DNA from: Octopus bimaculoides
Taxonomy: Eukaryota
Assembly: GCF_001194135.2 (NCBI RefSeq)
Contig: NC_069001.1
Span: 7,249,200-7,313,199, forward strand
Length of the DNA: 64,000 bases
Reading direction: 5' to 3'
In this document: positions 25,523 through 27,150 of the stretch, one piece after another
Layout of the letters: each line of letters opens with the position of its first letter
How positions within the stretch are numbered: the stretch's first letter is position 1
Notes under the pieces: model-generated
Database searches by the model: none
The model's input: the letters and a program-made list of their open reading frames with translations, nothing else
Told to the model about the DNA's origin: nothing
Translations under genes and position numbers: made by a program

Positions 25523-27016
25523 NNNNNNNNNNNNNNNNNNNNNNNNNNNNNNNNNNNNNNNNNNNNNNNNNNNNNNNNNNNNNNNNNNNNNNNNNNNNNN
25601 NNNNNNNNNNNNNNNNNNNNNNNNNNNNNNNNNNNNNNNNNNNNNNNNNNNNNNNNNNNNNNNNNNNNNNNNNNNNNNNNNNNNNNNNNNNNNNNNNNNN
25701 NNNNNNNNNNNNNNNNNNNNNNNNNNNNNNNNNNNNNNNNNNNNNNNNNNNNNNNNNNNNNNNNNNNNNNNNNNNNNNNNNNNNNNNNNNNNNNNNNNNN
25801 NNNNNNNNNNNNNNNNNNNNNNNNNNNNNNNNNNNNNNNNNNNNNNNNNNNNNNNNNNNNNNNNNNNNNNNNNNNNNNNNNNNNNNNNNNNNNNNNNNNN
25901 NNNNNNNNNNNNNNNNNNNNNNNNNNNNNNNNNNNNNNNNNNNNNNNNNNNNNNNNNNNNNNNNNNNNNNNNNNNNNNNNNNNNNNNNNNNNNNNNNNNN
26001 NNNNNNNNNNNNNNNNNNNNNNNNNNNNNNNNNNNNNNNNNNNNNNNNNNNNNNNNNNNNNNNNNNNNNNNNNNNNNNNNNNNNNNNNNNNNNNNNNNNN
26101 NNNNNNNNNNNNNNNNNNNNNNNNNNNNNNNNNNNNNNNNNNNNNNNNNNNNNNNNNNNNNNNNNNNNNNNNNNNNNNNNNNNNNNNNNNATCAAGCAGG
26201 AGTGTTCAGTTGATGACAAAAATGTTTGTCGTTTTCAGTTTGAGGTTTGAAATATCTTATCCAGAGATGGATGACCTAAAAAGCATTGACATTTTTTTCA
26301 TATTTAAACCGCTTCAACATCACACAAACACACGCGCATACACACACACTCTCTCTCTCACACACACACACACACACTCATACACATGGTGTTTCCACTA
26401 AACGATATTTTTGCTGGGGTTTTTTTTTTTTCCATCCAAGGAAGTGTAAGTCTGAGGTGATGGAATCAAAGCTGTATAAAACGGTGTCTCACCTAAAGAA
26501 TTTGACCACTTGGAAAACTTGAAACAACAAAGTCCATTGTCTGTTTGCCCAATATTTGGAATGTCTTCTCGCCATTTTCTTTGTCTCTAACAAACACTTT
26601 TGCTCCCACTTTGGTGATCTGGCTATAACTAATAACTTAGTATGGACACCGTATTTTTGACTGTGTATCTTGAAGTTCTTCAGTGTTTTGGCAGTTTGAA
26701 TTTACAGAGATACATATCTAAACCATATATCTAAATTACATAATATACATACATATATATATATCTATATCTATATATAATGCAATTTTTAATCAATTTT
26801 AATTTCAGAGTAGCCTCCCTTGCTTTTCTTGACAGGAAATTATCATCAGCGCTAAGATCTATATTTTCTTTCTTCGTTACAATTGAAATTTCAACTGATT
26901 AAAATAGATTTTTCTTAGACTCGTTAACCAAGTACATATATGGTATATCAAGAAAGAGTCTTTTGAAAATAACATCTAACAGTAGAGGGCAGGGGTGAAA
27001 AATAAAATCATCTTAC

Positions 27017-27150
27017 TTTCTGATGTGAATCGATACTGACCAACACATGTTTCTATTTTTACTCTTTTTTTTTTGTAATTTTTTTTTTTTATATCTGTTT
27101 CAGAATTAGGTCTTACTTACCTGAAAAATAAAACAAAAGAGAAAAATTAA
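27017..27150 (-). other. Recursive-splice-site-like motif (3'ss abutting 5'ss) with a 104-nt cryptic exon
   Basis: Minus strand: aatttttctcttttgttttatttttCAG|GTAAGTAAGA (AG at 27122-27121, GT at 27120-27119). A further donor AAA|gtaaga lies at 27016-27011. Confidence 0.5.

What the first reader, a model, noticed from the sequence alone, without database searches (positions are those of the whole stretch)
27011..27150. Recursive-splicing (ratchet point) architecture in a cephalopod intron
Seen on the minus strand: a 24-nt pyrimidine tract plus CAG, immediately followed by the perfect donor GTAAGT. A second overlapping donor (GTAAGA) lies 4 nt in, and a third (AAA|GTAAGA) lies 104 nt downstream, defining a stop-containing, frame-shifting cryptic exon. 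The flanks are SINE-free for about 1 kb on the downstream side. Established: this AG|GT plus downstream cryptic RS-exon layout defines recursive splice sites in long Drosophila and vertebrate neural introns. Inference: recursive splicing of a giant octopus intron, which I am not aware of being described in molluscs. The alternative is a 4-nt GTAA microexon.
Basis: partly seen in the sequence, partly recalled or inferred. Interest (0 to 1): 0.8.

Follow-up and report, generated by a model that had tools for sequence, protein, structure and literature searches.

The report
Octopus exon that begins with GTAAGT
A back-to-back splice acceptor and donor motif in a gene-poor stretch of an octopus genome is really used as an acceptor in RNA, but the RNA after it looks like a long non-coding, probably terminal, exon, so recursive splicing is possible but unproven.

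Summary
On the minus strand a 21/24 pyrimidine tract and CAG (27121-27123) abut GTAAGT (27120-27115). GTAAGA follows at 27116 and AAA|GTAAGA at 27016.

The 9-mer alone is at chance level. The full composite is rare, at 0.005-0.04 expected per window.

RNA data show the acceptor is used. Three RNA contig runs and four raw RNA-seq reads join two different upstream exons, neither present in the window, exactly to G27120. One junction recreates CAG|GTAAGT.

RNA then runs colinearly for at least 770 nt. It passes both predicted donors without splicing and has stops in every frame within 15 nt.

Depth steps up 8-10 fold at 27120 and falls 3-5 fold within 2.8 kb. It stays flat and low 3 kb upstream. 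That fits a stable exon better than a co-transcriptional sawtooth.

Best reading: an alternative, probably terminal or non-coding, exon inside a giant minus-strand intron. By sequence it is a putative RS-exon.

Re-splicing from the regenerated donor, lariats and deep conservation could not be tested. The recursive-splicing reading is partly supported (about 0.25). The 4-nt microexon and the 104-nt cryptic exon have no support.

The parts
27124..27147 (-). Polypyrimidine tract of the 3' splice site (21/24 C/T, TT at -5/-6)
   Evidence: Sequence read; counted. In organism C the contig diverges at 27142 into (GA)n on the plus strand, which is (TC)n on the minus strand.
27147..27168 (-). Candidate branch points (TTAAT; A at 27147, 27151, 27168, that is 27, 31 and 48 nt before the exon)
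   Evidence: Pattern scan. Inferred only; no lariat data.
27121..27123 (-). CAG acceptor. The intron ends at 27121 and this site is used in RNA.
   Evidence: Junction exactly at 27120 in RNA contigs of X18, X26 and X29. Four raw reads of X39 carry the junction; their loose end sits at 27123 because the upstream exon itself ends in CAG.
27115..27120 (-). GTAAGT, the first six bases of the exon. After splicing to the X39 upstream exon the junction reads CAG|GTAAGT, a regenerated consensus 5' splice site. Its use is untested.
27111..27116 (-). Second donor-like GTAAGA (TAA|GTAAGA). Not used in the data.
   Evidence: Reads and contigs are colinear through it.
27011..27016 (-). Third donor-like GTAAGA (AAA|GTAAGA), 104 nt into the exon. 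Not used in the data.
   Evidence: X38 raw reads and the X18, X26, X29 and X12 contigs run through it; no joints or loose ends there.
26351..27120 (-). Minimum extent of the transcribed, stop-rich, AT-rich exon block, interrupted in assemblies only by the TA-rich microsatellite at 26725-26779
   Evidence: Contigs: X18 26833-27120 and 26351-26769; X26 26750-27120; X29 26813-27120; X12 26751-27120 and 26363-26779; X25 26853-27061 and 26420-26779. Raw reads of X38 cover 26851-27120. Stops in all frames.
26788..26803 (-). Two ATTAAA hexamers, candidate proximal poly(A) signals 317-327 nt into the exon
   Evidence: Raw-read coverage of X38 falls off near here. No poly(A) reads were seen, so this is inferred.
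24100..24523 (-). Lower-level RNA coverage 2.6-3.0 kb downstream, either an extension of the exon/UTR or a retained intron. AATAAA at 24304-24299 and 24156-24151.
   Evidence: X12 depth 12, X16 28, X18 2.5, X38 raw 0. The strand is not shown by the data.

Best explanation
The site is a genuine, used 3' splice site on the minus strand, inside a very long intron of an octopus gene.

Shown: at least two different upstream exons, both outside this window, are spliced to G27120.

Shown: the RNA then continues unspliced for at least 770 nt, and at lower level to about 3 kb. It ignores the GTAAGA sites at 27116 and 27016.

Shown: every reading frame hits a stop within 15 nt of the junction.

Inferred: this is an alternative exon that ends the reading frame. 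Most likely it is an intronic alternative last exon with a long AT-rich 3'UTR that uses the ATTAAA or AATAAA signals downstream. It could instead be an exon of a non-coding isoform.

Because the exon starts with GTAAGT, the exon-exon junction recreates a consensus 5' splice site (CAG|GTAAGT). That makes it a 'putative RS-exon' by sequence definition.

Whether U1 and the spliceosome re-engage that site to remove the exon recursively is not shown. It is not needed to explain the data.
For: Junction at exactly 27120. RNA contigs of X18, X26 and X29 each carry the same 30 nt (GTCAGCTTCCAATGTCTGTGAAAGGGAAAC) fused to GTAAGTAAGA. Four raw RNA-seq reads of X39 carry ...GGGACTTATCA(CAG) fused to the same base, with a median of 82 nt of upstream exon. 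Neither upstream sequence is in the window.

The contig overlap is always exactly 30 nt (k-1). From how such assemblies are built, I infer that this upstream exon also has another partner in the same samples, so this exon is an alternative choice.

Depth profile on the minus strand, given as X12 / X16 / X18 / X25 / X38 raw reads:
- 3 kb upstream: 2.3 / 4.1 / 0 / 0 / no data
- 30-200 nt upstream: 6.5 / 8.9 / 0 / 0 / 0
- first 330 nt of the exon: 51 / 88 / 12.2 / 2.8 / about 5
- 350-770 nt into the exon: 69.6 / no data / 5.95 / 5.1 / about 1
- 2.6-3.0 kb downstream: 12 / 28 / 2.5 / no data / 0

Colinear contigs and reads cross 27116 and 27016 with no joints or loose ends. There are stops in all frames, including right after either upstream exon. 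PAS-like hexamers are present. There is no coding signal, Pfam, Rfam or tRNA hit anywhere in the 64 kb, as expected for a giant intron. Long 3'UTRs are reported as the outstanding feature of the octopus transcriptome (PMC9699675). [quoted passage not shown]
Against: No poly(A)-tailed read or defined 3' end was seen, so 'terminal' is inferred from declining depth, PAS-like hexamers and the lack of donor use.

The step-up at the site followed by a decline downstream is also what a recursive site would give in total RNA.

Contig depth is a crude measure. The library type of the deepest runs (X12, X16) is not on record, and the raw-read counts are small (5-7 reads per run from about 6% of each run).

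RNA runs X25 and X28 hold 28-33% of the words of 14000-23800. So transcription continues far downstream, and a downstream exon for a second splicing step may exist.

The full composite motif is locally rare. The regenerated donor is stronger than the internal ones, which is the arrangement that favours recursion.
Confidence: 0.58

Rival explanations
1. True recursive splicing. The upstream exon is first joined to 27120. The regenerated CAG|GTAAGT is then used as a donor to a downstream acceptor, so the block after 27120 is mainly a part-spliced intermediate, or an RS-exon that is usually removed.
For: AG|GTAAGT with a strong pyrimidine tract and TT at -5/-6. In Drosophila 99.5% of ratchet points have that TT (10.1101/006163). 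Junction reads run from upstream exons to an intronic AG|GT. Depth steps up 8-10 fold at the site and is higher downstream than upstream. The upstream exon has a second partner, inferred from the exact 30-nt overlap. The regenerated donor matches the 5'ss consensus at 9/9 positions, against 7/9 (27016) and 6/9 (27116) for the internal GTAAGA sites; donor competition of this kind decides skipping in flies (PMC8605326). Transcription continues 3-13 kb downstream in X25 and X28.
Against: A co-transcriptional sawtooth needs the same slope on both sides. Downstream, depth falls by about 60 units in 2.8 kb in X16. Upstream it is flat or falling with distance: 8.9 at 0.1 kb and 4.1 at 3 kb.

The junction and the block are seen in cDNA RNA-seq that has zero reads in the adjacent upstream intron. 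This points to a stable product rather than a transient intermediate.

There are no lariat reads and no exon1-exon2 junction. Conservation is known only in a species about 2% diverged.
Confidence: 0.25
2. Internal cassette or 'poison' exon whose real donor lies further downstream, beyond 26351 and possibly in the assembly gap 25523-26190. Alternatively, an exon followed by a slowly removed, retained intron.
For: RNA is colinear to at least 26351 and present at lower depth at 24100-24523. Downstream depth exceeds upstream depth. Stops in all frames would make it an NMD-type exon. Another AG|GTGAGA lies at 26492.
Against: No joint or loose end leaving the block was seen in the stretches that could be read. 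An internal exon of 770 nt or more would be unusually long.
Confidence: 0.12
3. Chance motif with no function, or a 4-nt GTAA microexon.
For: The 9-mer alone is at chance level. Donor-like GTRAG sites are frequent, at 1.8-3.2 per kb.
Against: The acceptor is used in four independent RNA runs from two studies, with two different upstream exons. All junction-bearing reads and contigs continue past 27116 without a break, so no GTAA microexon is seen.
Confidence: 0.03

Closest known systems
Putative RS-exons as defined in mammals (Sibley et al. 2015; Blazquez et al. 2018, PMC6224609)
   Same: An exon that starts with a partial 5' splice site, so that splicing to the preceding exon rebuilds a 5'ss at the exon-exon junction. 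Here it is CAG|GTAAGT. The exon is expressed, not invisible.
   Different: No use of the rebuilt donor has been shown. No donor at the exon's 3' end is used in the data, so it looks terminal rather than like a cassette. The evolutionary survey in that paper covered yeast, fly, Ciona, sea urchin, lamprey, zebrafish and human, but no mollusc.
Drosophila zero-nucleotide ratchet points with cryptic RS-exons (Hatton 1998; Duff 2015, 10.1101/006163; Joseph 2018/2021, PMC8605326)
   Same: Juxtaposed acceptor and donor, strong pyrimidine tract, TT at -5/-6, a long-intron setting, junction reads from an upstream exon, a short stop-containing frame-shifting interval to the next donor-like site, and a ratchet donor stronger than the downstream donor.
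   Different: Fly ratchet points leave no trace in stable RNA and show a sawtooth, lariats and deep conservation. Here the downstream sequence is retained as an abundant block, the sawtooth test is not met, and lariats and conservation are untested. The putative 104-nt exon is about twice the typical fly cryptic exon of roughly 50 nt.
Cryptic or alternative last exons within long introns (intronic polyadenylation; e.g. the SFPQ-repressed cryptic last exons, PMC7997972)
   Same: An unannotated-looking exon deep in a long intron, entered through a strong acceptor. It truncates the reading frame at once and continues as a long AT-rich tail without a used donor.
   Different: No poly(A) site has been mapped here. 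The host gene, its tissue pattern and any regulator are unknown.

Membership tests
Intronic recursive splice site / ratchet point (Duff 2015 criteria) | AG|GT(R)AGT with juxtaposed 3'ss and 5'ss consensus, a prominent pyrimidine tract and TT at -5/-6 | tested here: met
   21/24 pyrimidines, TTTCAG|GTAAGT. It is the only such site in 64 kb, with 0.005-0.04 expected.
Intronic recursive splice site / ratchet point (Duff 2015 criteria) | Splice-junction reads from an upstream exon's 5'ss to the intronic AG|GT | tested here: met
   X18, X26 and X29 contigs and four X39 raw reads end exactly at 27120 with non-window sequence upstream. The upstream sequences are not in the window.
Intronic recursive splice site / ratchet point (Duff 2015 criteria) | Sawtooth: a 5'-to-3' decline of intronic read density that resets at the site | tested here: inconclusive
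   An 8-10 fold step-up is present at the site. The slopes are inconsistent: a steep fall downstream (88 to 28 in 2.8 kb) against flat, low depth upstream (8.9 at 0.1 kb, 4.1 at 3 kb). This leans against a sawtooth. It rests on contig depth and on libraries of unknown type. Only three short stretches could be read.
Intronic recursive splice site / ratchet point (Duff 2015 criteria) | Zero-length exon: sequence after the site is absent from stable RNA | tested here: not met
   A colinear RNA block of at least 770 nt after 27120 in RNA contigs and cDNA raw reads, with zero reads just upstream.
Intronic recursive splice site / ratchet point (Duff 2015 criteria) | Lariats formed from the regenerated 5'ss (second step) | not testable with these tools
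The downstream exon is unknown.
Intronic recursive splice site / ratchet point (Duff 2015 criteria) | Sequence conservation of the AG|GT core across species | tested here: inconclusive
   Organism C shares 54% of 31-mers, roughly 2% divergence. A low-depth contig of it overlaps 27114-27142 with no difference flagged. RNA runs of organisms B, D and E share only 2-3 of 28 words. The index cannot see sequence below about 95% identity.
Putative RS-exon (Blazquez 2018 definition) | The exon rebuilds a 5'ss at the junction with its preceding exon | tested here: met
   The X39 junction reads ...ATCACAG|GTAAGT and the X18/X26/X29 junction reads ...GGAAAC|GTAAGT.
Putative RS-exon (Blazquez 2018 definition) | Competition between the rebuilt 5'ss and the exon's own downstream 5'ss, giving skipping or inclusion | tested here: not met
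   No downstream donor of the exon is used in any read or contig. Use of the rebuilt donor is not tested.
Alternative last exon / intronic polyadenylation isoform | A used acceptor, no used donor, and an early stop | tested here: met
   junction and colinearity; stops within 1-5 codons in every frame.
Alternative last exon / intronic polyadenylation isoform | A mapped cleavage and poly(A) site with a PAS | tested here: inconclusive
   ATTAAA x2 at 26803-26788 and AATAAA at 24304 and 24156. Depth declines downstream. No poly(A)-tailed reads were seen among the few reads available.

The most novel reading that the evidence does not exclude
The site is a working recursive splice site (or a recursively removed RS-exon) in a giant octopus intron. 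The junction reads found here would then be its first-step products. That would make it the first RNA-supported recursive splicing event in a mollusc or lophotrochozoan. Full-text searches found no paper on recursive splicing in cephalopods: the one paper holding both terms mentions each only once, and a second search ranked none near the top.
Probability: 0.22. Interest if true: 0.65.

Novelty: new member of a known kind. Interest (0 to 1): 0.42.

Why it matters
Recursive splicing is documented in insects and vertebrates. Whether the very long neural introns of cephalopods use it is an open and reasonable question.

This site is now more than a motif. RNA shows that its acceptor is used and that one junction rebuilds a perfect donor. 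That gives a concrete locus where the second step can be tested with lariat reads, nascent RNA or a minigene.

If the site is only an alternative last exon, it is ordinary biology. It is still a useful caution: exons starting with GT(A)AGT are common (PMC6224609), so motif plus junction reads are not enough to call recursion.

Tried and rejected
1. Laying raw reads on 20 kb (17001-37000) failed nine times because the machine was busy. The profile therefore rests on five short stretches.

2. I looked for the two upstream-exon 30-mers in the window, with up to 3 mismatches and as 18-mers with up to 2 mismatches, and in metagenome contigs. Nothing was found, so the host gene is unidentified.

3. 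I looked for coding exons. Six-frame open stretches and Pfam on the ten best gave nothing. Rfam and tRNA scans were empty.

4. Genomic variant or misassembly at 27120 instead of splicing: rejected. Colinear contigs cross the site (X13 26750-27312, X16 27093-27300). Two different partners also join at the exact AG| boundary.

5. Internal priming on the A-runs at 27055-27090: rejected. Coverage lies on the wrong side of the A-runs for a minus-strand RNA, and it ends sharply at the splice site.

6. Plus-strand transcript: rejected. No GT/AG reading of the junction is possible on that strand. The libraries themselves are unstranded, with both mate directions present.

7. A literature search for lophotrochozoan recursive splicing returned only irrelevant papers.

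Full report
THE OBSERVATION. On the minus strand the window reads ...ATTTTTCTCTTTTGTTTTATTTTTCAG|GTAAGTAAGACC. CAG occupies 27123-27121 and the G of GT is at 27120. A second GTAAGA starts at 27116, and AAA|GTAAGA has its GT at 27016, which is 104 nt further on. The 104-nt interval has stops in all three frames and shifts the frame. The tract is 21/24 pyrimidines rather than pure, with T at -5 and -6. The coordinates and the description are therefore correct.

CHANCE. The core 9-mer is not unusual. CAGGTAAGT occurs once against 0.57 expected, and YAGGTRAGT once against 2.4 expected. The composite is unusual. With at least 19/24 pyrimidines upstream, it is expected 0.005 to 0.038 times per window in simulations that keep local composition. 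It is the only AG|GTRAG in 64 kb with a strong tract. The downstream donor-like site adds nothing, because 22% of random positions have a GTRAG within 30-200 nt. At genome scale several hundred such composites would still arise by chance, so the motif alone decides nothing.

CONTEXT. The window is a gapped draft with 18 N runs and 4,382 N, full of microsatellites and a SINE-like repeat. Six-frame scans found no convincing coding stretch. Pfam found nothing on the ten best open stretches. Rfam and tRNA scans were empty. A repeat-borne open frame hits proteins named Octopus vulgaris and Octopus bimaculoides, so the cephalopod origin holds. All this fits a very long intron or intergenic DNA.

RNA EVIDENCE AT THE BOUNDARY. 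This is the main result.
- In three RNA contig runs of one study (X18, X26, X29), a contig on the minus strand begins with the same 30 nt (RNA sense GTCAGCTTCCAATGTCTGTGAAAGGGAAAC) fused directly to GTAAGTAAGA at 27120. It then runs colinearly to 26833, 26750 and 26813 respectively.
- In raw reads of an independent RNA-seq run (X39), four reads carry a different upstream sequence (...CGGTACCATAGGTAGTAAAGGGACTTATCA, median 82 nt) up to position 27123.
- The base pair before 27123 on the minus strand is TT, not AG. The simplest reading is that this upstream exon ends in CAG and is joined at 27120, with three bases of alignment ambiguity. That junction is CAG|GTAAGT.
- Neither upstream sequence occurs anywhere in the window, even in part. 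They were also absent from metagenome contigs. The upstream exons therefore lie more than 37 kb away, in a gap, or on another scaffold.
- Colinear contigs across the site exist in other runs (X13 26750-27312, X16 27093-27300), so the break is splicing and not an assembly difference.
- The strand follows from the splice-site dinucleotides. The libraries are unstranded.
- The overlap with the upstream exon is exactly 30 nt (k-1) in all three contig runs. From how such assemblies are built, I infer that this upstream exon has at least one other continuation in the same samples.

WHAT FOLLOWS THE ACCEPTOR. No read or contig leaves the sequence at 27116 or 27016. X38 raw reads and the X18, X26, X29, X12 and X25 contigs run straight through. 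The clean 500-nt lay-out listed only the two boundary loose ends. The RNA block reaches at least 26351, broken in assemblies only at a TA-rich microsatellite. After either upstream exon, every frame meets a stop within one to five codons. No AATAAA lies in the first 2.8 kb. Two ATTAAA hexamers sit at 26803-26788, and AATAAA occurs at 24304 and 24156.

DEPTH PROFILE along the direction of transcription:
- 2.8-3.4 kb upstream: X12 2.3, X16 4.1 (each covering only about 40% of the stretch), X18 0, X25 0.
- 30-200 nt upstream: X12 6.5, X16 8.9, X18 0, X26 0, X29 0, raw runs 0.
- First 330 nt after the site: X12 51, X16 88, X18 12.2, X26 8.1, X29 4.5, X38 raw about 5.
- 350-770 nt after the site: X12 69.6, X18 5.95, X25 5.1, X38 raw about 1.
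- 2.6-3.0 kb after the site: X12 12, X16 28, X18 2.5, X38 raw 0.
- Further down (14000-23800), X25 and X28 hold 28-33% of sampled words and X16 holds 34%. The repeat background seen in other species is about 7%.

RECURSIVE SITE OR EXON? A ratchet point in total RNA gives low signal just upstream and a jump at the site, and that is seen here. A co-transcriptional sawtooth also requires the same slope in both segments. In X16 the signal drops by about 60 units in 2.8 kb downstream. Upstream it does not rise with distance at all: 8.9 near the site and 4.1 at 3 kb. X12 behaves the same way. The junction and the block also appear in cDNA libraries that have no reads in the adjoining upstream intron. 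This is expected of a stable product rather than a short-lived intermediate.

The most economical reading is an alternative exon entered through a strong acceptor. It closes the reading frame at once and continues as a long AT-rich tail. Most likely it is an intronic alternative last exon with proximal and distal ends, or an exon of a non-coding isoform. Long 3'UTRs are described as the outstanding feature of the octopus transcriptome (PMC9699675). I put this at about 0.58.

Caveats: contig depth is crude, the type of the deepest libraries is not recorded, raw-read counts are small, and no poly(A) tail was seen.

WHAT REMAINS OF THE RECURSIVE-SPLICING IDEA. By the sequence definition used for mammals, any exon that rebuilds a 5'ss at its upstream junction is a putative RS-exon (PMC6224609). 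This exon qualifies, with a 9/9 match to the donor consensus at one junction. The rebuilt donor is stronger than the internal GTAAGA sites. In flies that arrangement drives use of the ratchet donor (PMC8605326). Two of the Drosophila discovery criteria are met: the AG|GT motif with TT at -5/-6, and junction reads from an upstream exon (10.1101/006163). The gradient criterion is ambiguous and leans against.

[quoted passage not shown] It also reports that over a thousand expressed human exons rebuild a 5'ss at their upstream junction, most of them kept from re-splicing. The architecture is therefore permissive, not diagnostic.

Lariats could not be tested. Conservation could be checked only in a species about 2% diverged: a low-depth contig of it overlaps the core with no difference flagged, then runs into a (TC)n extension of the tract. 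I give true recursion about 0.25, a long cassette or poison exon with an unseen donor about 0.12, and a functionless motif or GTAA microexon about 0.03.

NOVELTY AND VALUE. One full-text search returned a single paper holding both 'recursive splicing' and 'cephalopod', each mentioned once, and it is not about cephalopod recursion. A second search listed no paper on recursion in octopus, squid or molluscs among its top hits. The cross-species survey of RS-exons included no mollusc. If the second step were shown, this would be a first for the phylum and a modest but real extension of a known mechanism. As it stands, the finding is a real, used splice acceptor with a regenerated consensus donor. 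It is a new member of a known kind and a well-defined test locus, not a demonstrated ratchet point.

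Noticed in passing
window 26485-26500, minus strand (G of GT at 26492): A second acceptor-donor juxtaposition, TTCTTTAG|GTGAGACACC (14/24 pyrimidines), lies inside the transcribed block about 630 nt after the first. RNA contigs run through it colinearly.
   Followed up: no
window 10145-10522, 14727-14948, 22240-22404, 25244-25520, 35540-35870, 62512-62703 and others: A dispersed repeat is present on both strands. Its translated frames recur (...TRLQSDLAEFLQLDALPNANHSESVVGAF...). 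One copy hits proteins named Octopus vulgaris (45% identity) and O. bimaculoides (87% over a quarter of the query). This shows that gene models in those genomes include repeat-derived ORFs.
   Followed up: partly
window 27280-27700: RNA reads here are 95-99% alike and only partly fit, so they come from other copies of a repeat. A recurrent joint 27436->27671, with TGATG inserted and non-splice ends GG..CA, is seen in all three raw runs (13-24 reads). It probably reflects a shorter expressed copy elsewhere.
   Followed up: no
window 27280-27700: Among the mismatch types in these repeat-derived RNA reads, A>G (6) and T>C (3-5) dominate in each run. This could be A-to-I editing of repeat transcripts, which is known to be extensive in cephalopods, or simply divergence between copies.
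   Followed up: no
window 26835: RNA contigs of X26 and X29 read A where the window has G (C>U in RNA sense). X16 matches the window. This is likely a polymorphism between animals.
   Followed up: no
window 27142 onward (organism C): A contig of the closely related organism C overlaps the AG|GTAAGT core with no difference flagged. At 27142 it diverges into (GA)n on the plus strand, which is a (TC)n extension of the pyrimidine tract on the minus strand.
   Followed up: partly
window 14000-23800: RNA contig runs X28 and X25 hold 33% and 28% of the sampled words of this 10-kb stretch. The repeat background seen in other species is about 7%. Substantial RNA therefore exists 3-13 kb downstream of the site. 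Its exons, strand and link to the 27120 exon were not mapped.
   Followed up: no
whole window: The window is a draft assembly with 18 N gaps totalling 4,382 N, one of them (25523-26190) only 160 nt beyond the last mapped RNA contig (26351). The true end of the exon block may lie in unassembled sequence.
   Followed up: no
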